Assembly (NCBI GenBank): GCA_904063045.1
Contig: CAJFCJ010000018.1
Coordinates: forward strand, 930,429 to 994,428
Length of the DNA: 64,000 nucleotides
Source: Dimorphilus gyrociliatus
Lineage: Eukaryota; Animalia; Annelida
Reading direction: 5' to 3'
Positions 5,254 to 23,534 of the stretch are shown here, in pieces. Below the pieces are notes generated by a model. That model did not search any database, was not told the origin of the DNA, and saw only the letters and a list, made by a program, of their open reading frames with translations. Within the stretch, counting starts at the first letter, position 1. The number at the start of each line of letters is the position of its first letter. Both the position numbers and the translations under genes were made by a program.

Positions 5254-6123
5254 ATGACAGAGAATGAAGACGAATATACGAGTCGTTTAGTAAAGTTGGT
5301 TTTAATAGGAGACGGAACCTCTGGAAAGGTTTTGAGAGTTATCTAGTTATTTCCTGCAGTTTGCTAATTCAAAAATTTCGCGTAGACTTCTTTAGCTTAT
5401 CGGTACGTTAACGATACATTCAGCAAACCTTACTCGCAAACACTAGGAATTGATTGTTTATTAAAGAGAACAATTTTATCAAGTAATGTTCACGTTACTG
5501 CACAAATATGGCATATTGGAGGCCAAAGTATTGGAGGAGGGATGCTTGATAAATACCTTTACAACGCCGATGGTGTAATTTTAGTATATGACGTTACCAA
5601 TTTGGAAAGTTTTGAAAATTTAATGGATTGGAAAGAGCAAGTTCTTCAACTTATAAGATTACGTAGCGATGCAAAATTTCCTCACTTTGTTCTTGTGGGT
5701 AACAAAAGTAAGGATTTGATATTCCATAAGAAGTTTATTAAGCTAAGTTTTAACTATTTTTAATTTAGTCGATCTCGAACATTTAAGGGTTGTTCGAGGG
5801 CAGCGACAAGAAGCGTTTGCAAAGAAACAAGGCATGAGTTCATATTTTGTTTCGGCTAAAACAGGAGAGGGCGTAAGTTGGTATTTTACCGCGAATGATC
5901 TGTCTATAAAATATTTTATTGTTTAAAGGTTACGATGTGTTTTAAGAAAGTTATTGCTGATATTTTAGGCATTAAATTGACGGTAAAAGATCATGATTAT
6001 CAATATACTATAGTTAAAGCAGAAATTGTCAAAGAAAAGAAAAAATGCACAGAAAATTCAACAGTTCAATCAGTTGCAAGACCAAAATCTCCAGAGAAAA
6101 GCTCGTTTTGTGTTGTTCAATAA
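5254..6123 (+). CDS. RAB28: Rab28 small GTPase
   Basis: LVLIGDGTSGK-TS, IGGQSIGGGMLDKYLYNADGV (Rab28 signature GGQTIGGKMLDKYIYGA), NKID, VSAKTG and C-terminal CaaX CVVQ. The G3 motif reads WHIGG instead of WDIGG. Confidence 0.92.
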
Positions 6124-6601
6124 GTTGTTTTATCCTATATTAGAAAGGGTAGACTTAACCTTGCTAGACTACACTTCAGGCAGATTATAGACTTATTTCT
6201 CCAATGATTTTATATATTCCTTATATTGAATAAAGTTAAGTTTTAGTAATCGTTTTATTACTCTATTTTACAAATATTTATTGAGTCTTCAATAAACTTA
6301 CAAGAGATATTTGTTATAAATAAATATAAACACTCTTTTCCCGCCTTCTAAATCTTTCAAAGAGATGGAACCGTATTCCAGTGCGAATTTTATCTAAATT
6401 TTTAAGATCAGAATATTTGCAGCAAATCATTGTTGCAAAGAACGCAGAAATTTTCGCAGGGTTTCTATGACGGATCCATTTTGCTGAATGCTTATTGAAA
6501 TAAACCGGTGACAGCAAGTGATTGAATATTATGTAAGTTTCCTGTAAGATTTTAACACCTTACAAATCGCTGGAATATTCAATTTGAAATATTTAGGCAA
6601 A

Positions 6602-9600
6602 ATGTCTTCGCCTGCCAAATCTCATTATCAGCCGGCACACGATGGACAATTTTCGTTTAAAGATTTATGTGATAGAATGTTAAGAATGAAAGTTGATCAA
6701 AATGTTTCTACCTATCATTTACATGAGATATTTAACGAAATACTATCTATGAATTATAAAAGTTTTACATTTCAACGTGTAAATGTAAGTGGATTTTTAT
6801 TAATACTTTGTTTTGCTATTTCTTTATATCTATATATCACCTTAAATACGGCTATCAGGTTAGATATATGAAATGACTATTTGTTAACAAACAAGTAATT
6901 TATTTTCAGACCTTAACAAGTTTCATTAACAATGGCATAAAACTAGTGAAACTTAATGAACATCACTTAGTTAATAAGTTTTGCGAAGCTATTTATAAAG
7001 TAGGATGGGATTTGGACGAGGTAACACTTTCTGTCAATATTTTTGGAATAAAAGAATACTCAATTTTTTCCTCTAATTGCTATTTATAGGTGAAACTTGT
7101 AGATTTACAAATTGACCAAGTTATTAATTGGTTTCTAAATGCTATTGAACAATCTCCAAGATGGGTTACAGGAAAAATATTATTTAGTTTTTCTGTAATC
7201 CTAAATAAACAATGTTACGACGCCTCACCAAAAATTTGTGCTGCTTTAATCTCTGAATATGGCTTCCTCACAACTTTTTTGTCGATGACCAAAGATATTG
7301 AAATGGCAACCGGTGTGGCTGCGTGTCTGAAATCTTTCTTTAGATTTGATGCAGATATGCAGGAAGATATGAATATTGACTGCAGAACTATACGTTATGT
7401 ATTTGCTAAACTTTTACATTGTTTAGCTATTGAGATACCTCGGATGACTTCAGATCAACTAAAGCATCTCCGAATGGTCACATATACTTTACATCTACTT
7501 CAAAGTTTGTACAAATTGGGATACTTTTGGCATAAAGAAGAAGTTTGTCAAATACTTAGAGTGAGAATATATTTATTTATATTTGAAGCTTATAGTAATT
7601 TTATATTATTGTAGAGATTTTGCGTCCTTAACCCATCTGTGGACTTTAAATATATAGATATCCGAGCCACTATAGACAAATTATATTCTTTGAACGATGA
7701 AAATTACGTAAAATTACAATCAGTGAGGGCTAAGCGTAGCAAATCTGGTAAAAAGAAGAAAAAACCCGAAACAACTCAATTAAAAGCATATAACGTCCAA
7801 TCAAAAATTAACTGGAATAAATTTTCATACGAGTTTAAGTGAGTTTTATATGAAATTGCATCATTTTTCAAGTATAATATATATATATATATACTGTATA
7901 TGTCTTTGTTTTTTAATTACAAAAGATTTCTTTCAAACGAAGAGGAACAAGTGATAAGTGAAGATGCCATGAGAATCATAAATATACCTATTCCGTCGAA
8001 ATGTGAATCTGTACACGATGAAGTTAGAATCCTAGCATTGAAAACTTTACCAGTTGCTCTCTCCTATTTGGACTTGTCTGAATCTTTTGATTTGGCAGTT
8101 TCAATGCTTAGTTTAAATCAAAAGTTTAAGCAGCAAAAAAGTATCCTTGTCTTCTGTTTTGAAGCAACTGATTTACATAGCAGAGTTAGAACGGAAGCAA
8201 TTGAATTTATAACGGCCGTTATTAGGAAATGTAAAGATATATTATCCAATATACACGATAATGTACTGAAACCCCTTACAATAACCTGTTCTTCAATGGC
8301 ACCTAAGGCTTTTGAATTGTTCATAAATATTCATCAGCTTTTAACATACATCATAGCAACAGAAACCAACTGCAATGTTGTAACAGAAGCGTTAAAAAGT
8401 TTTGAAACTCTATTAGAGATTGTACCATATTCAAGAGTTCGTCCAAAGTTATTTTATGATATAATCCAAATGGCTATGCATTGCCTGAATTGTAATGATA
8501 TCACTCTAAGAATCGGTGCTTATAAAGTAATAGCAGCTTGTCTAAGCGTTGGCCGAGACAGTAATGGAATAAATAAGCATGTTGCTTTCGTTCTCCTGTC
8601 GAAAGCTTCTATGCTGTTCAAAGGATCTGTTAAGCCACTTTGTATTGTTGAGCCTACTGTTAACAAAGGTGGAGCATTATTGATGGTTGATGTTCACGAT
8701 AGTAGAGAGGATGTAGAAGAGGATGTATTTCATCATGGAAAACTTTATGACTTTTTGATGCAAGGAGAAAGTGTAATTAATCAAAATGTTCTATACGAGA
8801 AAGTCAAACTTGGAAATTGCTGGTTGTTATCTTTAGTATTTCGTATTCTATCTGCAAAATTGTTCGATCTTCAAGATGTTGCATATACTACGGTTGAGGG
8901 TTTCCATGGTTTAGTCGAAAATGAAGAATGGGTGTACAAAGGAAAAAGATTAGTTTCAGTTGTTGAAGTTATAGAAGTAATAAGCATATTAAGATGCTTG
9001 TTCCGCCATGCATTTGTAGTTCTTGTTCCATACATTGGAGCAATTCACAAATATACTCTTCGACTTTGTTCTCATCAGGTCATCAGAAGTCTATACAAAT
9101 GTTCAATTGATAGTTATACTTTTTTGTTTTACAGGACGATTCTTTACGATGTCATGGTCTAAAACTTTGGACGGAGTTTGTAACTGCTGAAAGTGTTTTA
9201 AACGCGGAAGAAAGCTTATTACCAAAATCTCTAGTCTACATAATGTGGTCTGAAATGATCGAAAAATGCCTTCTGACATGTATAGCAGCTCAACAATCTT
9301 CCGTTGTGACAGCCTCAGCCAATGCTCTTTCCCAAATATCTCAATCTGTGTTTGATCTATTTCGATCGGAAAAAGGTCCAATTCTTTATTCCATTGTTAC
9401 ATCTGCTGCAAATTCCATTCTGACGTCGAAATCAATTGATGACAATTGCACAGCGGCAGTTTTCAAAACAGCAGGAACTTTTGCAAAATTTCAATGTACA
9501 AGACAAGAATATGGTTTTATAGATGATGTTGTTCGCTTAGTTGCGAATATTGTGGGTCGTCATTCGAAGAAGAACGACGAATTAAAAATGGTTATGCAGC

Positions 9601-15231: not shown

Positions 15232-17000
15232 TCACAAAGATGGTTTAGTCGCGGTTTTCTTGATTGTCCATTCATCCTTTCTTAATTGCTGCAACTCTCT
15301 AACGGTTTTGGCCTTCCAACCTAGCCAAATAAATCCGATAATAAAACAGACAAATGACTCAATATAGTAACCATCGATACGAGTAACGCACGATCCTCCG
15401 TCTGCTTGACAAGTTTTCATTGTTAAAGGTTCCACCATCCAGAGGGCAACAGTGCCTGGCCAATTACCGCCGAAATTCGAAATTGTATTCAGCAAGGTCA
15501 TATATGTTCCCCCTATTGCAGGATCGCTGATGGTTGCACTAAAACTCATTCCAGCTACGTACATACTATAGATCGTAACTTGATGAAGGGCATACGATAT
15601 TAAAAGAACGATATAGAAGTATCCGGCAATTGTACCCTTATCATCAGCCGTTTTAGGTGCCCACCATACTAATACGGCTAACCAAGCTCCACCTAAAAGT
15701 CTAAATGGAATGGCTTTGAGGAAAACATTCATGGGATTTGGACCAGTAGTATATTTGCTAATAAATATTGGCAGAATAATTTGAACTGGTATCATTGGTA
15801 TGGAAAAAAGAGCTAATTTTTCTCTCGGTACACCTCCTTCAATAAGCTTTAAGGCAGTAACAGCATCACAAGCTGCAAAGCCAATCTGAAAAAAAAATTG
15901 ATTATTTTTTTTGTCCAGGATTTTTTCTTCAATAGAGAAAGGAAACTCAAGTAAAAAATTATAATTACCTTGCACGTTAGTAAAACGACAACTAACTTTC
16001 CAATTGACTTTAATTTAAATATACATAGAAGTAATTTATAAGTTTCGATTAAACCAAATTCTTCATCATTATTTTCGGCAGCTGCATTTCTTTCCTTTTT
16101 GAAAACTGACACTAGAGTCGTTGTAATTAGAAAAACAATCCCACACCCTTTCAAAAAAGCTAATAGGATAAAGAAAAAGTGTTATTAGCGATGTTTTTTT
16201 CAAAAAGAAAATGAGGGAAAATTTGCTAATTAAATACTCACTACTCAATGTAACAATTCCAGTAGGATATGGTGTGCTTCGAAGAAAATTATTACAGAAA
16301 TCTGGCGATTCTAAAGCCAAGAATACTACATTGCCTATAAAGTAACCTGCTGTTTGACCAACAGTGTTACAAGTCGATGCCCAGGCTACATTTTGTCTAA
16401 TATAAATAAGAAATAGAAATTACTATGATTAATAGGCTATACAGAAATATTACGGTTTAACGATTACCTAGAAAGCATTGTCAAAGCCCATCCGTCAACA
16501 GCAATATCCTGGGTAGCAGCCAAGAAATTCAAGAGGAAAAAGATAGCAGTCAGTAAATATATGTTCAAATTGCCTTCGTCCATTATTTGGGAAATAAATA
16601 GGGATAAAGCCAACATGAAAATCCCAATAAGATACTGAACGGGAACTAGCCACGATTTTCTTCTTCCAAACGAGGTAATATATAAAGAATCCACAATAGG
16701 AGCCCACAATAACTTCACTGAGAATGGCCAATATACAAAACTAAACAGGGCTTGATCATTATATGATACTTTCCTAGTTGATAATAGATAGGGTATAGCC
16801 CCTGCAAGACCTAATGGAATGCCTTGTAGAACATACAAAAACATTAAAAGTGCTATGTTTTTTCTGTCTCCTTCGATCTGAGTACACATCTGCTGACAGT
16901 CTTTGTTCGATTTATTTTCATAATTATCTGAATTTGCCATATTGTTCAACTCTGAATTTTCAGGGGCAGTTGCTTTCCTTCGTTTGGCTTCGTTTTGCAT
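15232..17000 (-). CDS. SLC33A1: Acetyl-CoA transporter 1 (MFS)
   Basis: LYVLQGIPLGLAGAIP, YWPFSVKLLWAPIVDS, RRKSWLVPVQYLIG, LAATQDIAVDGWALTMLSR, DPAIGGTYMTLLNTISNFGGNWP and DGYYIESFVC. Confidence 0.96.
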
Positions 17001-17402: not shown

Positions 17403-17828
17403 ATGGCGAAGTCGAAGAATCATACAAATCATAACCAAAGTACGTATTTTAACGAGTTAAACTCGTCTGGAAATCATTTTTCTTTACAAAATACTTGTAT
17501 TTCAGACCGTAAACAACATAGAAACGGAATTAAGCGTCCAAAGAAGCAAAGGTTTCCGTCATTGAAGGGAGTAAGTAGTTTGGGTTAAAAAATGCGTGTA
17601 TTTATCAAGGCGAACCTATACAAGCCTGTTTCATTATTACTATTTAAGTTCAAAAATTATATATATCTCTTTCAAAATAATTTATAGCAGATTATTTTAC
17701 ATGAAATGCTGTAATTTTATTCCCCAAAACTTAATTTGATTGTTTTGCTACAGGTTGACCCTAAATTCTTGAGAAACATGCGTTACGCCAAGAAGCACAA
17801 CAAGCCCGCTGTCAATACGCAAAAATAA
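17403..17828 (+). CDS. RPL29: 60S ribosomal protein L29 (3 coding exons)
   Basis: [58 protein letters not shown]. Confidence 0.97.
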
Positions 17829-18151
17829 CTTTGCTTCGTTAATGCATTTTATCACATTCTGTGAATAAAATTGCTAATAAATGATCTAATAAGTCGAATT
17901 CAATATTTATTAAAAATTATAAGATAATATTTCAAATCAAAAAATATCCTTAGTATTTGTTAGTATTGAACAGAGAAATTAGCATTTCATTCAGAAAAAA
18001 ATTTATTAATGAACGCTAGGACAGAAAATATATCCGATAAATGTATTTCTCTGATAATGTAAAGATTAATTTGAACTATATATTTTTAATCTGACCATTG
18101 AAAATATAAATTGAAAAATACCCTCTTCTCTTTAACTAATCTTTCATATAT

Positions 18152-21100
18152 CTACTTTGCATTTATCCTAGCTAGCTCTTCCTCTGCAATTTTTTTCTTT
18201 ATAGCAAAAATTCTAGCTTCATCCTTATCACCTGTCCTAGCAATCCTTAGACATTCGCATTTATACTTCTCAATTGAGATCTCAATATCAATCTTATATT
18301 GCTTCAAATTAATTTGATCTTTTAGTTTTTTACGAATTTCCTGTTCGATCTGTTCGTATAATTTGTATTCTTTAGAAAACCGAGCGCTTGATGCGGAATC
18401 AATATTCGGACGACTGCTGAGTTCTCGGAGTCTCTCTTTTTCAAATTTAATCACGTCCAAGGATAACATTCCACTTCCCGACTTCTGAGGAGGAGAATTC
18501 CTGAAAGATTTATATTTTCCAATAATAAGAAATTTTGCAAGAAATATAGTACATTTATTTAAAATGTTAAACCTCTTTAAACAAGATACAGCAGGTAAAA
18601 AGCCAATTGAAATTGACAAATCAATGAAATTATTGTAAATTTTGCTTTCAAGAAATAATACTGTGATCTTTTTTAAATAAACAAGACTTGCAGTTAACAA
18701 TTATTAGAGTTCAGATGAAAATGTTCCTTCGCGTCTGCACTGGGACCGAGAGGTGTCGGCTTCGATGGGGAAGTCACAAGATGGCGCAAGCCTTCGATTT
18801 AACATTCCTGCCGCCAAGAATTTATATACATGCAATGTGACTTAAATAGTTTTACACTATTACGGAAAAAGTACGAGTAGGTTAATACTATATTATGATT
18901 TCATATTTAAGATGATAAAATAAGAAACTATTAGAGCGAGCCTGATGGTCTCCATCATTAGATTACTCTATTTCCACGTTATAAAACCGATACTCAAATG
19001 AACAATGGCAGGCTCTAAATTATTTTCCCTCTAAAAGACTAACAATGCACATAAAACTCGTATCATCTCCATTCAGCTATGGTAGTAGCAAAACGGAAAG
19101 AGAAGAGAATAAAGAAAAATTAATCAAAGAAACTTACTTTTGTCCCTGAGCGTAATTTGATGTGTTCATTGCTATAGAATGAGCTTGAGCAAAGGTATCG
19201 AGAACAAGCCATCTTTGATTGACATGTTCAATTTGACTTTTTCCACTAAGAGGCGTCCGAATTCGAACTTTCACTTCTAATTTTCCACCGACTGCCTTTC
19301 TTCCTTCATACAAATCGTGCATTCCATGTAACTCGCAATGACTTTCCAGATCGATCAGCTTAATTGAAACACTGCCCAGTAGTTTGTCGCTTTTCATGAA
19401 ACCTGAAGAAAACAAATGTAATTATATTTACTTGTAGATCAATTATTGCGAATATTGTATATATAGGAAAATAGAACGTTACCTCTTTTGTAATAGACAT
19501 CAACTTTCAGATTTTTATGTTTAATTTGTCTCTGGAAAGCAGATGATTTTCTTTGTATATTTAACTTGGTAGAAAAATCATATTCAGGATTATTTGTTCC
19601 TTTTACTGTTGAGCCTAATTCTCCAGTTTGAGGTTCATCCTAGAATTATAAGAAGAGTATATACATTTTTTGTTTTGCAATAGATTTTTGGTGAATACCT
19701 TCGGAATAGGGAATTCATATTTCAAGTAGGTATTTAATTGATGAGGAGAATAGCCATCTGGAAGAGATAAATTTATTCCTTTTACAACATGCAATTCCAT
19801 ATCATTATCTCCCAAATCTGCGCATGATCTAGATATAAGAAAGACAAAAATTTATGATAAGTAGTAAATTTCATAAATTTTAATATCATCAATTTACATT
19901 ACTATCGAGAAATTCTTTGTTTCGTAATGAAACCTTGGAGGTGGATCGTTGTGTTGAAATGCATTTTTCAACGCCCCCAGATCCTTTCGAGCACATTTTG
20001 CCCATTCATCCAATTTATTTGACATATTAATATCTCCAAGTTTCAGGAAATGTTCGTGGTTCGTTTCGCACATTCTAATTTGATCGATAAGATCTTGCTC
20101 TAATTTTTTGTAAACTTCTTCTCTATCACCTTCCGGTTCGTCTATAAAGCATTGTGGTTCACTTTGCTTTAAAGGTGGAGGAGGCAAATTACTCATATCG
20201 ACTGGCAAGCCTTTTTCACTCGCTTCAACCATATTCTTCAGCCCTAAATATACTCTCAATGAATCTTTTGCTGATTCGAGGTCACCTTTTTTCTTTGCCT
20301 CTGCTGCAGCATACTTATACTCCATCTGTCGTCTTTGAAGAATTTGACGTTGTTGGGCTGCTCGTGAGAGGTTTGTTCCAGATTTTGGAGGTAATGGAGC
20401 CTATTGTTTGGAGAGAGAGGTAAAATGTAATCGTTTCTCAAAATTATGAATAAAAATTTACCGCTTTTTTAACAACTTTTTGCTCAACTGGTTTTGGTGT
20501 TGGCAGTGGGAGGGGAGATAATGGCTTTACATTTGACACCACCGGTTGCACAGGCTCATTTGTTTGCATAGGTATAGCAGGAAAGCCGGGTGGGCATGGA
20601 AGTTCTTCGAAATCAACTTGTCTTCCAGTCTTATGTGCCTTAATTGCCTCCTCATATTGTTTAACAATTCGTTTAAAGCGTCGACTTTTGCTGTTGTTCT
20701 TTGCTTCTTCAGCCTTAGCTAATTCAGACGCATACTTTTCTTTACGCTGCTGTAAAGCTTGTAAAATATTACGGGGTGCCTCTGGAACTCCTAATAACTT
20801 TTTTGCTTCCTCTTCTGCTTGCGGATCAAGATCAATTTGAGGCTCTTGTTGATCAGATGATGTTGTGGGTGGAGGGGGAGGCATTTTGCTTAAATCTACA
20901 GCTTCACCTTTCATCATAGCCTCTAGGACAGTATCAAATTGCTGCAACAAATAGAAATGGAAAACATTAACAAAGGTAAAGACAAATGAGAACATATTTA
21001 ATGTATAAAAAACTTTACTTACTTTGGAAGTACTTAAATACTTTCTAGCAGTCTCTAAATCACCTCTTTCTTTGGCCTTAAGTGCCGCTTGTTTATATAA

Positions 21101-22054
21101 TAAACCTCTTTCTTTAACAACTCTTGCAGAATCATTTTGTTGCACTGGTAAGGACGGCGGTGCTACAGCAACGGGTTTGGGCTCTGTTTGCCGTGGACCT
21201 TTGTTTTTTTTTATGAATGAGAATTAGACAAAATCTATAAAAGAAAAAAAGCCTATATATTAAAAACTACCAACTTTCGCGCTCTTCATTGTAAATTTTC
21301 ACTGGTTCAGGCTTAGGTTGAGCTTGAGATTGTGATTGTGCAGAAGCAGCTAAATTATGATTTGAAGTGCTAACAGTAACAGCCGGAGGTATATCTTCGT
21401 TACTAATCATATTTCCTATTAGTTTGTTTATTATCATTTTGAAGGAAAAATAGATAAATAAAGTATATTAGTTTATGAAAATATATAATATGGCAGATCA
21501 AACCTGATTTAGCTCGTTTCAGTTGTTCTTGTAAGGTCTTTATTCCTCTATCCATTCTGCGAGCCTGTAAAGAGTTAAAAAAAATTAAAGATTTACTTAA
21601 AATAGATACGCCTTTGAAAACCAATAGCTATTTATTTGAGGTTTCCATTAAAAATTTCTGTGTTATATTTGAAACTGAGTAAGAACAGTCTAATTATCTT
21701 TTCATCAATCATTATTAACATTTTAATTAGAGAATTAGCTCCATCCATCATTTTTATTTTCGATTTTACGACTTATATTATCCAATAGAAACAAATTTGT
21801 TATTGTTTTAATAAATTAATTCTAATAAAGAATTCAACTAACTTTACTCTGATCATGAGCTGTTCTAGCATTTTGCTGAGCTGTTCTATACATTACGAGC
21901 CTTTCTTCAATAACTTGAACAATTGTAGGTCCACTATTTAAAGGATTCATTGTCGCATCGGGGATTTTTTCAGGAGATCTTTTCGGAGACGACGGACCAC
22001 TAGCTTCCATTGCAAGCATCTCTAACTCATCCTATACATAAAGCATACAGTATG

Positions 22055-22101
<47 letters not shown>

Positions 22102-23534
22102 CAGCAGCTGATTTACTTATATGAAAATCGGGTTAAATAAAAAGGATAAAGACTGCGTAGTATTAATTGCTTAAAAGCGCACTTGGATTTCTATTTTATG
22201 CAAAGATATAAAGCTTACTTCAATTTTCAAGGAAGATAGAATCTTTTTTGTCAATTTTCGTATAAAGAATAGTTAACAATATATAAATAATTATCGATTC
22301 CTTTTATATTTATATATATAGCTATTATTTAACATATCAATATACGAATGAAAATTTGAAACAAATACTGTCATATGAATAGATCTTTCCCCTCTCTTTC
22401 TCCAATCTATCATTGACAATGGTGACAAACTATATAATTTAGTAAATATTTAAAAAAATTATCCACCTACTATATACAGTTCTTATTACTACATGTATGT
22501 TTTTATTTTTTAATGAGTAAACCTTACTTTCAGCTAAGTTTGTATACAATTGTGTTATTTTATTTAAAATACCAAACAAAACTCTATGGAATACTGTTTT
22601 TTATCATTATTAAAAAAAAATTCAACTACAGAATATTTGTATTCCATTTACAACAGTTATGTTACTCGTTTAATGTCAACAGGTATAGCTGGGGAAGTCT
22701 ATAAACCGTTAATGTTAATAGTTTCCCTTTGAGAGAAGATTAACGATTTATTGAGGAAACAGACTTAAGTAATAAATATTACTTGCATAAGAAATAAAAT
22801 GTATACTTTAATCGCAGTATACATTTTTGACATATTTATCTATTTTGTTTAAAAATAGTATTTTGTATAACAAAAAATGACATTATGTAATTTTAAAATG
22901 GTTTATGCAAGAATGGAAAGGCAAACCTCTATTTCAGGATCATCTGAATCAGACACTTCGAGATCGATTGGTTCGTCAACGTTGGAAATAATCTTTTGTA
23001 ACTCTTTTTCACTTATACTCTTCGGAACGGAACGTTTGGCTTTTTTTTGAGATTTGCTCTCTTTCACCTGCTCTCCAGCTAATGCTGCCAATTCAGCTTC
23101 CAAGTCTTCGTCATCATTCTCGTTAAAATTGTTCGAAGGTGTCGCCGTAAGATCACCACTGTCCGGGATCGCTAGTCCCATCTGATGGGTATATTTGTGT
23201 TAACATTACGTTAGACATAAATATTGATTAATACAATTATATTGTTCTAATTTACAGTAGAATATATATGCTAATATAAATAAAATATGACAACACTAAC
23301 AGAAGGTTTCTATTCATTCCGTGCTTAATTATTATCTTATTTAAATGTAAATTAGCATGACCTTAATAAAAAGAGATTTTCAGATCGTAATTTTACATTA
23401 AACATCTTAACAGATTAAATGACAATATCAGTATGATCCATAAATGAGAGAACATAACTAACTTGCTGCATCAAAGCTTGGCCTCTGCCAGCTGAAGATT
23501 GTCGTTTCTCTGTAGTTTTCTTTTTTCCAAACAT
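18152..23534 (-). CDS. CC2D1A: CC2D1A/B / lethal(2) giant discs (DM14 repeats + C2 domain + CC2D1A-type C-terminal extension)
   Basis: Start MFGKKK at 23534. DM14 repeats (YKQAALKAKERGDLETARKYL; LQQRKEKYASE; YKYAAAEAKKKGDLESA). C2 domain (VVKGINLSLPDG...KAVGGKLEVKVRIRTPL...QRWLV). Last exon 18500-18152 with LSLDVIKFEKERL...IAEEELARI matches the CC2D1A tail. Confidence 0.92.
18774..18807 (-). CDS. Candidate alternative terminal exon of CC2D1/Lgd encoding NVKSKACAIL* (CaaX box)
   Basis: The acceptor ...ttcttggcggcag|G AAT GTT AAA TCG AAG GCT TGC GCC ATC TTG TGA is in phase with the C2 exon donor CAA AA|gtaagt at 19137. Confidence 0.5.
22059..22101. repeat. (TA)n microsatellite
   Basis: About 20 TA units in a CC2D1 intron. 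Confidence 0.92.

What the first reader, a model, noticed from the sequence alone, without database searches (positions are those of the whole stretch)
18774..19137. Hidden alternative terminal exon gives Lgd/CC2D1 a prenylation (CaaX) tail
Seen in sequence: the C2 exon ends CAA AA|gtaagt (19137, minus strand). It can splice to the distal acceptor at 18500 (CC2D1A-type 115-aa extension) or to a proximal cag at 18808, which yields Q-K-N-V-K-S-K-A-C-A-I-L-stop. That is a basic stretch plus a CaaL box in the correct phase, within a locally GC-richer patch of an AT-rich intron. Reading through the donor gives a third end, QGQK*, resembling Lgd/CC2D1B, which stop just after C2. Use of the proximal acceptor leaves no downstream junction, so the mRNA would escape NMD. 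Established: Lgd/CC2D1 regulate ESCRT-III (Shrub/CHMP4) and are regarded as cytosolic, and CaaL is a geranylgeranyl-transferase I signal. Inference: a splice switch could make a membrane-anchored ESCRT-III regulator, which I am not aware of having been described.
Basis: partly seen in the sequence, partly recalled or inferred. Interest (0 to 1): 0.7.

Follow-up and report, generated by a model that had tools for sequence, protein, structure and literature searches.

The report
Conserved prenyl-tail exon in CC2D1
A 34-base stretch in the last intron of this marine worm's CC2D1/Lgd gene matches a tiny alternative last exon, conserved from corals to fish, that ends this ESCRT-III regulator in a lipid-attachment (CaaX) signal, an isoform that no paper I could search mentions.

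Summary
On the minus strand the C2 exon ends at 19138 (AA|gtaagt). The cag at 18810-18808 opens a 34-nt reading K-NVKSKACAIL-stop (18807-18774).

Taken alone this is near chance: 5% of shuffled introns give some CaaX tail. Comparison changes the verdict. Short CC2D1 isoforms ending S-x-aliphatic-C-x-aliphatic-X-stop are annotated in corals, a jellyfish, a nemertean, 12 molluscs, echinoderms, a hemichordate and amphioxus. In teleosts a short CC2D1A-like form, probably a separate gene, carries the same ending.

At DNA level the micro-exon lies between the C2/linker exon and the helical extension exon, after a phase-2 donor, in a coral, an oyster, a brittle star and amphioxus. I also found unannotated copies in the annelids Capitella (SSGVCRLL*) and Owenia (SSSVCGIC*). 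The motif built from other species occurs in 0.16% of shuffled worm introns and once in the whole window.

The exon is therefore very probably real and orthologous.

No paper found links CC2D1/Lgd to prenylation. BROX is a known farnesylated CHMP4 binder.

The scan noted this same stretch once more from an overlapping window (s1-084107), without follow-up.

The parts
18152..23181 (-). CC2D1/Lgd gene, from the start ATG at 23181 to the distal stop TAG at 18154-18152
   Evidence: Pfam DM14 (PF21528) E 3.4e-22 and 1.2e-5 on exon translations. tblastn of Capitella and Lottia CC2D1 maps exons along 23187..18155.
19138..19402 (-). Exon with the second half of the C2 domain plus a 20-residue linker. 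It ends in phase 2 (AA|gt).
   Evidence: Read. phmmer with its 87 aa finds CC2D1 orthologues, best 58% identity, E 4.9e-18.
19136..19137 (-). Donor GT (gtaagt) shared by both splice choices. Read-through stop TAA at 19134-19136.
   Evidence: ORF 19134..19415.
18501..19137 (-). Last intron of the long isoform (637 nt), among the longest in a gene whose other introns are mostly about 60-260 nt
18808..18810 (-). Proximal acceptor cag. The tract before it is ttctt followed by ggcgg, weaker than the tttcag of neighbouring acceptors.
18774..18807 (-). Alternative micro-exon coding part: 1 nt + 10 codons + TGA, giving (K)NVKSKACAIL-stop
   Evidence: It is the only window segment matching the cross-species motif.
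18777..18788 (-). CaaX box codons TGC GCC ATC TTG (C-A-I-L)
   Evidence: CAIL is also the box of the Mytilus isoforms P0182, P0189 and P0190. PMC1175975 lists it as a valid box.
18554..18559 (-). AATAAA inside the intron, 215 nt after the TGA and 53 nt before the distal acceptor. It is a candidate poly(A) signal for the short isoform.
   Evidence: Read. This is inference only, since AT-rich sequence gives such hexamers by chance.
18152..18500 (-). Distal last exon: a 116-residue helical extension (S.DVIKFEKERL ... KKKIAEEEL) of the long isoform
   Evidence: It aligns with the extensions of 13 orthologues. Weak Snf7 match, E 0.002.
18002..18007 (-). AATAAA after the distal stop. It is a candidate poly(A) signal of the long isoform.
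   Evidence: Read.

Best explanation
Window 18807-18774 (minus strand) is the Dimorphilus gyrociliatus copy of an ancient alternative last micro-exon of CC2D1/Lgd genes.

The exon carrying the end of the C2 domain and a short linker ends in phase 2. It can join either of two exons. The distal exon adds a helical extension of about 115 residues. The proximal micro-exon adds ten residues ending in C-A-I-L-stop.

Inferred steps:
- The short mRNA ends at a poly(A) site inside the intron.
- The Cys is prenylated. X = L favours geranylgeranyl transferase I, and CAIL is also accepted by farnesyl transferase.
- AIL is trimmed and the Cys is methylated.
- The lipid, the three lysines at -2, -4 and -7, and the adjacent C2 domain hold the protein on membranes.
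- The DM14 repeats would then meet CHMP4/Shrub at the membrane rather than in the cytosol.

Shown here: the sequence, its phase, and its orthology by position, phase and motif. Inferred: splicing in this worm, the lipid modification, and the effect on ESCRT-III.
For: 1. The sequence and phase are as stated.

2. Annotated short isoforms end with the same motif.
- Molluscs: Crassostrea CTIS, Ostrea CTIS, Mya CMIM, Dreissena CTLM, Potamilus CVVL, Mytilus CAIL, Pomacea CSIA, Littorina CTLS, Biomphalaria CTLS, Ylistrum CILS, Liolophura CVLS.
- Other phyla: nemertean Lineus CSVS, Amphiura CMLS, Anneissia CSAS, Ptychodera CNII, Branchiostoma CSVV and CVIC.
- Cnidaria: corals CSVS/CSVT/CSVA, jellyfish Rhopilema CCLS.
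- Teleosts: a short CC2D1A-like form ends CSVL/CLLL/CRVL.

3. The residues before the Cys match. The worm has KSKAC, Ptychodera ESKAC, Pomacea KSKLC, Dreissena KSKVC.

4. The genomic architecture is the same: linker exon, then CaaX micro-exon, then extension exon. The donor is phase 2 and the micro-exon starts with 1 nt. This holds in Capitella, Owenia, Amphiura, Branchiostoma, Ostrea and Pocillopora.

5. The motif is rare by chance: 31 of 20000 shuffles and 1 of 5044 window segments. The worm's own CC2D1 paralogue has a 1096-nt intron with 82 AGs and no in-phase Cxxx tail.

6. A 1543-nt Logan contig carries an uninterrupted 354-aa ORF running DM14-C2-...CAVT-stop, which looks like spliced mRNA.

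7. The genome holds the prenylation machinery: three prenyltransferase beta-type loci, alpha-subunit repeats, and ICMT.

8. The linker is hydrophilic and carries lysines at positions -1 to -7, as PMC1175975 describes for GGT1 substrates.
Against:
- The proximal acceptor has a poor pyrimidine tract (ggcgg just before cag), unlike the strong tracts in Capitella and Owenia.
- The worm's own annotated proteins for this gene were not visible in any database search.
- The a1 and X positions vary widely among species (S, T, M, N, R, G; X = S, M, L, V, I, A, T, C). The type of lipid is therefore not conserved, and some boxes (CSAS, CNII, CGIC) are atypical.
- No experiment anywhere shows prenylation of a CC2D1 protein.
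Confidence: 0.7

Rival explanations
1. Relic exon. The micro-exon is orthologous to the conserved CaaX exon but is no longer spliced in Dimorphilus, whose compact genome has lost many features. Only the long isoform, and perhaps the read-through form, is made.
For: The acceptor is weak. The worm's paralogue has lost the exon altogether. Lineages do lose it: the largely arthropod proteins that end right after C2, and Babylonia, which has Ser in place of Cys.
Against: An unused 34-nt stretch in a fast-evolving AT-rich intron should not keep an open frame, the Cys, the stop and the SK-aliphatic-C context. The flanking intron shows no such conservation. Local GC is exon-like.
Confidence: 0.13
2. 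The exon is used and conserved, but the terminal Cys motif serves something other than CaaX prenylation. Candidates are S-acylation, a C-terminal degron or a protein-binding tail.
For: Several species have atypical boxes (CSAS, CNII, CGIC, CCLS). There are no experimental data.
Against: The invariant features are exactly those of a CaaX box: Cys at -4 from the stop, an aliphatic residue at -2, and a hydrophilic linker. Class I PDZ ligands need S/T at -2 and a hydrophobic last residue, which most of these tails lack. CAIL, CSVL, CVVL, CMIM and CTLM are standard boxes (PMC1175975).
Confidence: 0.08
3. Chance. An AG followed by a short open frame that happens to end C-A-I-L-stop in an AT-rich intron.
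Against: The match covers eight positions of a motif defined on other phyla (0.16% of shuffles). It sits in the orthologous intron and in the right phase. The same exon is present in two other annelids.
Confidence: 0.04
4. Regulatory truncation only. The exon matters as a premature end that removes the helical extension or lowers the output of the long mRNA, and the peptide it encodes is irrelevant.
For: The switch does remove a conserved Snf7-like extension. The read-through end is annotated for the worm's paralogue.
Against: Read-through of the donor already gives a stop after one codon, so no exon is needed for truncation. What is conserved is the peptide motif, not merely a stop.
Confidence: 0.05

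Closest known systems
[quoted passage not shown]
   Same: Same gene family. Same position of the alternative exon, after the C2/linker exon and before the extension exon. Same phase 2, same size (8-12 codons) and same S-x-aliphatic-C-x-aliphatic-X-stop ending. Mytilus has the identical CAIL box.
   Different: Here the exon is inferred from genomic sequence only, and its acceptor is weaker. Those models are automatic predictions, and no paper I could search discusses them.
BROX (Bro1 domain and CAAX motif containing protein)
   Same: An ESCRT-III accessory protein suggested to act like ALIX in recruiting CHMP4, and named for its C-terminal CAAX motif (PMC7995964). That the motif is farnesylated is my own knowledge. 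It works like what is proposed here: a lipid-anchored CHMP4 partner.
   Different: It has a Bro1 domain, not DM14 repeats plus C2. Its CaaX is constitutive, not supplied by an alternative exon. It is not homologous.
Drosophila Lgd and mammalian CC2D1A/CC2D1B as studied experimentally
   Same: DM14 repeats that bind Shrub/CHMP4, plus a C-terminal C2 domain (PMC11275157, PMC4697852, PMC6286407).
   Different: In my sample the proteins that end within 10 residues of the C2 domain, largely arthropod by the names I saw, have neither alternative end. The papers discuss a cytosolic chaperone model or a recruitment model and mention no isoform and no anchor (PMC11275157 has 0 occurrences of either word).
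Alternative last exons that switch a lipid anchor, such as K-Ras4A/4B and the Cdc42 brain and ubiquitous isoforms (own knowledge, not tested here)
   Same: An alternative 3' exon changes the C-terminal membrane-targeting signal of an otherwise identical protein.
   Different: Those swap one lipid signal for another. Here a lipid signal is exchanged for a helical protein module.

Membership tests
CC2D1/Lgd family | Repeated DM14 domains | tested here: met
   PF21528 E 3.4e-22 (window 20444-21145) and E 1.2e-5 (19894-20325), both above the gathering score.
CC2D1/Lgd family | C-terminal C2 domain of the CC2D1 type | tested here: met
   The 87-aa exon alone gives no Pfam hit. It aligns at 45-62% identity to the C2 region of CC2D1 proteins that carry PF00168. 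The upstream C2 exons map by tblastn.
Conserved CC2D1 CaaX alternative last exon | Lies in the intron between the C2/linker exon and the first exon of the helical extension | tested here: met
   Worm 18807-18774 lies between 19138 and 18500. The order is the same in Capitella, Owenia, Amphiura, Branchiostoma, Ostrea and Pocillopora.
Conserved CC2D1 CaaX alternative last exon | Phase-2 donor, with the micro-exon being 1 nt + 8-12 codons + stop | tested here: met
   Worm AA|g + 10 codons. Capitella AC|T, Owenia CA|A, Amphiura and Branchiostoma AG|C, Ostrea (donor not read)|C, Pocillopora GA|C.
Conserved CC2D1 CaaX alternative last exon | Ends S-[KSGARV]-aliphatic-C-x-[IVLA]-x-stop | tested here: met
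   KSKACAIL-stop matches. 31 of 20000 shuffles match, and it is the only one of 5044 window segments to match.
Conserved CC2D1 CaaX alternative last exon | Actually spliced to the C2/linker exon in mRNA | not tested
In other species there are RefSeq isoform models and one mRNA-like Logan contig.
CaaX prenylation substrates | Cys at the fourth position from the C-terminus, aliphatic a2, and an X that selects the enzyme | tested here: met
   C-A-I-L. Leucine is preferred by GGT1, and CAIL was also shown valid for FT in vitro (PMC1175975).
CaaX prenylation substrates | Flexible hydrophilic linker of about 11 residues before the Cys, with lysines at -1 to -7 for GGT1 | tested here: met
   The residues before the Cys are Y-A-Q-G-Q-K-N-V-K-S-K-A, with three lysines at -2, -4 and -7 (judged against PMC1175975). 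This was done by inspection, since no predictor was on hand.
CaaX prenylation substrates | The organism has prenyltransferases and the processing methyltransferase | tested here: met
   G000 has PF00432 at three loci (best E 6.5e-93), PF01239 repeats and ICMT PF04140 E 1.6e-18. I did not look for Rce1.
CaaX prenylation substrates | Covalent isoprenoid on the Cys | not testable with these tools
   This needs metabolic labelling or mass spectrometry.
BROX-type lipid-anchored CHMP4 binder (works-like comparison only) | Bro1 domain | tested here: not met
   Pfam finds only DM14 on the exons scanned. The gene is not a member. The resemblance is functional only.

The most novel reading that the evidence does not exclude
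CC2D1/Lgd has had two alternative C-termini since before cnidarians and bilaterians split. One is a Snf7-like helical module. The other is a prenyl anchor made from a ten-codon last exon.

The anchored isoform would be a membrane-resident partner of CHMP4/Shrub. It may have been overlooked because the proteins ending right after C2, largely arthropod by name and presumably including fly Lgd, have neither alternative end. I did not look at mammals.

In teleosts the two ends appear to be split between paralogues.
Probability: 0.55. Interest if true: 0.85.

Novelty: new variant of a known kind. Interest (0 to 1): 0.75.

Why it matters
The field debates two models for Lgd/CC2D1. In one it keeps Shrub/CHMP4 from polymerising in the cytosol. 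In the other it brings Shrub/CHMP4 to the endosomal membrane (PMC11275157).

An evolutionarily old isoform with a lipid anchor next to the C2 domain would give the family a dedicated membrane-bound form. It would make the two models testable isoform by isoform in animals that keep both ends, such as molluscs, annelids, sea urchin relatives, amphioxus and some fish.

The finding also shows that a ten-codon exon missed by annelid gene models can be recovered by motif, position and phase.

For this window alone the gain is a corrected gene model. The wider value lies in the cross-phylum pattern, which none of the papers I could search mentions.

Tried and rejected
- **Joined spliced model.** I did not build or search it. 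Exons were searched one by one by reference, or as separate rows of alignment A1.
- **Structured RNA.** An Rfam scan of 17800-19500 gave only two far sub-threshold matches.
- **Repeat or transposon.** The GC-rich patch 18690-18850 is single-copy in the 77.9-Mb assembly.
- **The worm's own protein or transcripts for this gene.** None appeared in the representative search, the two word searches that could have caught it, or the profile search. I therefore could not see whether the official annotation has the short isoform.
- **Short isoforms by identity.** The look-up of encoding contigs has no record for short isoforms or for the Pomacea GenBank model. I used the longest isoforms instead.
- **PDZ-ligand reading of the tail.** Rejected, because most tails lack S/T at -2 or a hydrophobic end.
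- **Tetrapods and human.** Not examined. The vertebrate word search listed only fish among its best 120. I took no human sequence.

Full report
**What is in the sequence**

The gene on the minus strand from about 23181 to 18152 is a CC2D1/Lgd orthologue. Two exon translations hit the DM14 domain above Pfam's threshold. Capitella and Lottia CC2D1 map exon by exon along the gene.

The exon 19402..19138 carries the second half of the C2 domain and a 20-residue linker. It ends GGA CAA AA|gtaagt, which is phase 2.
- Read-through gives K then TAA.
- The distal acceptor (tttcag, exon from 18500) adds 116 residues up to TAG at 18154-18152.
- The cag at 18810-18808 opens (AA)G AAT GTT AAA TCG AAG GCT TGC GCC ATC TTG TGA, which is K-NVKSKACAIL-stop (18807-18774).

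Of the 31 AGs in the 637-nt intron this is the only one whose in-phase tail has Cys at -4. The patch is GC-richer than its surroundings. It is single-copy in the 77.9-Mb assembly and matches no Rfam family.

**Chance**

5.1% of dinucleotide-preserving shuffles of this intron give some C-aliphatic-aliphatic-X tail, and 1.0% give CaaL/F. A reader who scans many introns will therefore meet such cases.

**Relatives**

A phmmer search with the 87-aa C2 exon returned CC2D1 proteins of three kinds.
- 90 of those of 500 residues or more stop within 10 residues of the C2 domain. By the names I saw they are largely arthropod.
- 73 carry a long extension beginning S.EVLKFEKQ.
- 15 have a short tail of 28-40 residues ending Cxxx.

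Names show that most of these short forms are alternative isoforms of the same genes as the long forms. Their endings are:

| Group | Species and ending |
|---|---|
| Bivalves | Crassostrea and Ostrea KSSICTIS, Mya SRACMIM, Dreissena KSKVCTLM, Potamilus SSTCVVL, Mytilus SGVCAIL, Ylistrum SSLCILS |
| Gastropods | Pomacea KSKLCSIA, Littorina KSSICTLS, Biomphalaria RSKVCTLS |
| Chiton | Liolophura SSKVCVLS |
| Nemertean | Lineus TSKVCSVS |
| Echinoderms | Amphiura HSKVCMLS, Anneissia SSSICSAS |
| Hemichordate | Ptychodera ESKACNII |
| Amphioxus | RSKMCSVV, plus a second exon GYCVIC |
| Corals | AKSAVCSVS/T/A |
| Jellyfish | RSSVCCLS |

In teleosts a short CC2D1A-like form ends SS.C[SLR][VL]L in clupeiforms, esociforms, a smelt, characiforms and gymnotiforms. 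It looks like a separate gene in most, although Esox labels it a CC2D1A isoform.

The worm's KSKACAIL fits this series position by position.

**Genomic architecture**

The order is linker exon, then CaaX micro-exon, then first extension exon in five other species: Amphiura, Branchiostoma, Ostrea, the coral Pocillopora and the two annelids below. The donor before the micro-exon is phase 2 wherever I read it, and every micro-exon starts with one nucleotide that completes the split codon.

The annelids Capitella and Owenia have only long models. In both I found the micro-exon in the expected intron and phase, behind strong pyrimidine tracts.
- Capitella L002 from 6868 reads T-SSGVCRLL-stop.
- Owenia L003 from 48026 reads Q-KKTSSSVCGIC-stop, downstream of a small linker exon that also ends in phase 2.

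**Statistics with the outside motif**

I wrote the pattern S-[KSGARV]-[AVILMT]-C-x-[IVLA]-x-stop from the other species. It occurs in 31 of 20000 shuffled worm introns. It occurs in one of 5044 stop-terminated six-frame segments of the whole window, and that one is the finding.

There is also an internal control. The worm has a second CC2D1 gene on another contig, which identifies the organism as Dimorphilus gyrociliatus (DgyrCDS13554-13556). Its equivalent intron is longer (1096 nt, 82 AGs) and has no in-phase Cxxx tail.

**Mechanism**

Shown: sequence, phase and orthology.

Inferred:
- The proximal acceptor is used in a share of transcripts.
- The short mRNA ends inside the intron, where an AATAAA lies at 18559-18554.
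- The Cys is prenylated, the last three residues are removed and the Cys is methylated.
- The lipid, the nearby lysines and the C2 domain keep the protein on membranes.

The genome has three prenyltransferase beta-type loci, alpha-subunit repeats and ICMT. PMC1175975 describes the features seen here: a hydrophilic linker of about 11 residues, lysines at -1 to -7 and leucine at X for GGT1, with CAIL also valid for FT.

The switch removes a conserved module of about 120 residues. That module, scanned one orthologue at a time, hits the N-terminal hairpin of Snf7 in 7 of 14 cases, all below threshold. The two isoforms would thus differ by a protein-type module against a lipid-type attachment.

**What is missing**

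I did not build or search the joined exon model. Exons were used singly by reference.

The proximal acceptor is poor (ggcgg before cag). A relic exon therefore remains possible, although an unused 34-nt frame would hardly keep eight motif positions and the stop in a fast-evolving AT-rich intron.

Transcript-level support elsewhere consists of the RefSeq isoform models and one 1543-nt Logan contig with an uninterrupted DM14-C2-...CAVT-stop ORF.

**Literature**

Full-text searches gave only incidental co-occurrences. They combined CC2D1 with prenyl, farnesyl or CaaX, and 'giant discs' with prenyl.

A 2024 structure-function paper on Lgd/CC2D1 contains neither 'isoform' nor 'anchor'. It frames the open question as cytosolic chaperone against membrane recruiter (PMC11275157).

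A precedent for a lipid-anchored CHMP4 partner exists in BROX, the Bro1 domain/CAAX motif protein (PMC7995964). The concept is therefore not new, but its occurrence in the CC2D1 family appears undescribed.

**Verdict**

Use in this worm and prenylation are still to be shown. This is a new variant of a known kind, with interest 0.75. Most of that interest comes from the cross-phylum pattern that the finding led to.

Noticed in passing
L007 (G000:C25:1006500-1016499), C2 exon 6074-6339, extension-like exon from about 7436 to 7790: The worm has a second CC2D1 paralogue, 45% identical in the C2 exon. Its annotated proteins (DgyrCDS13554 and 13556) end by reading through the phase-2 donor (KNR-stop). 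Yet an in-phase exon resembling the helical extension (SLQVLKFERE...) lies 1.1 kb downstream and is absent from those models. There is no CaaX micro-exon in between.
   Followed up: partly
window 18155-18499 (-) and alignment A2: The long C-terminal extension of CC2D1 proteins matches the N-terminal helical hairpin of Pfam Snf7 (PF03357) in 7 of 14 orthologues scanned singly. The best E is 1.1e-5 and the worm's is 0.002, all below the gathering score. One orthologue also touches PspA_IM30. An ESCRT-III-like hairpin on an ESCRT-III regulator may deserve a profile-profile and structure check.
   Followed up: partly
L005 11914-11934 and 13616-13636: Branchiostoma has two different Cxxx-ending terminal exons in the same intron (GYCVIC-stop and KMCSVV-stop). 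Both are used in RefSeq isoforms.
   Followed up: partly
proteins P0009, P0156, P0157 (Babylonia areolata): The short isoforms of this whelk end KSSISTLS, with Ser exactly where relatives have the prenylated Cys. This looks like a natural loss of the anchor while the exon is kept.
   Followed up: no
proteins P0094, P0099, P0159, P0272-P0292, P0323: In several teleost orders the CaaX ending sits on a short form of 360-620 aa, mostly labelled 'CC2D1A-like', beside a long CC2D1A without it. Esox labels it a CC2D1A isoform. Where the two are separate genes, this looks like division of the two ancestral isoforms between duplicates.
   Followed up: partly
window 18807-18801 vs 18500-18494; L009 28254 vs 30280: The two alternative exons begin with the same few nucleotides: GAAT in the worm and CCAAG in Ostrea. 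Both isoforms therefore share the first one or two residues after the junction. This could reflect a splicing constraint or an old exon duplication.
   Followed up: no
window 17403-17588 (+); 15232-17000 (-): A ribosomal protein L29e gene lies on the opposite strand (PF01779, E 1.4e-12). It sits between the 3' end of CC2D1 and the start of an acetyl-CoA transporter gene (PF13000, E 5e-42). The packing is very tight and convergent.
   Followed up: partly
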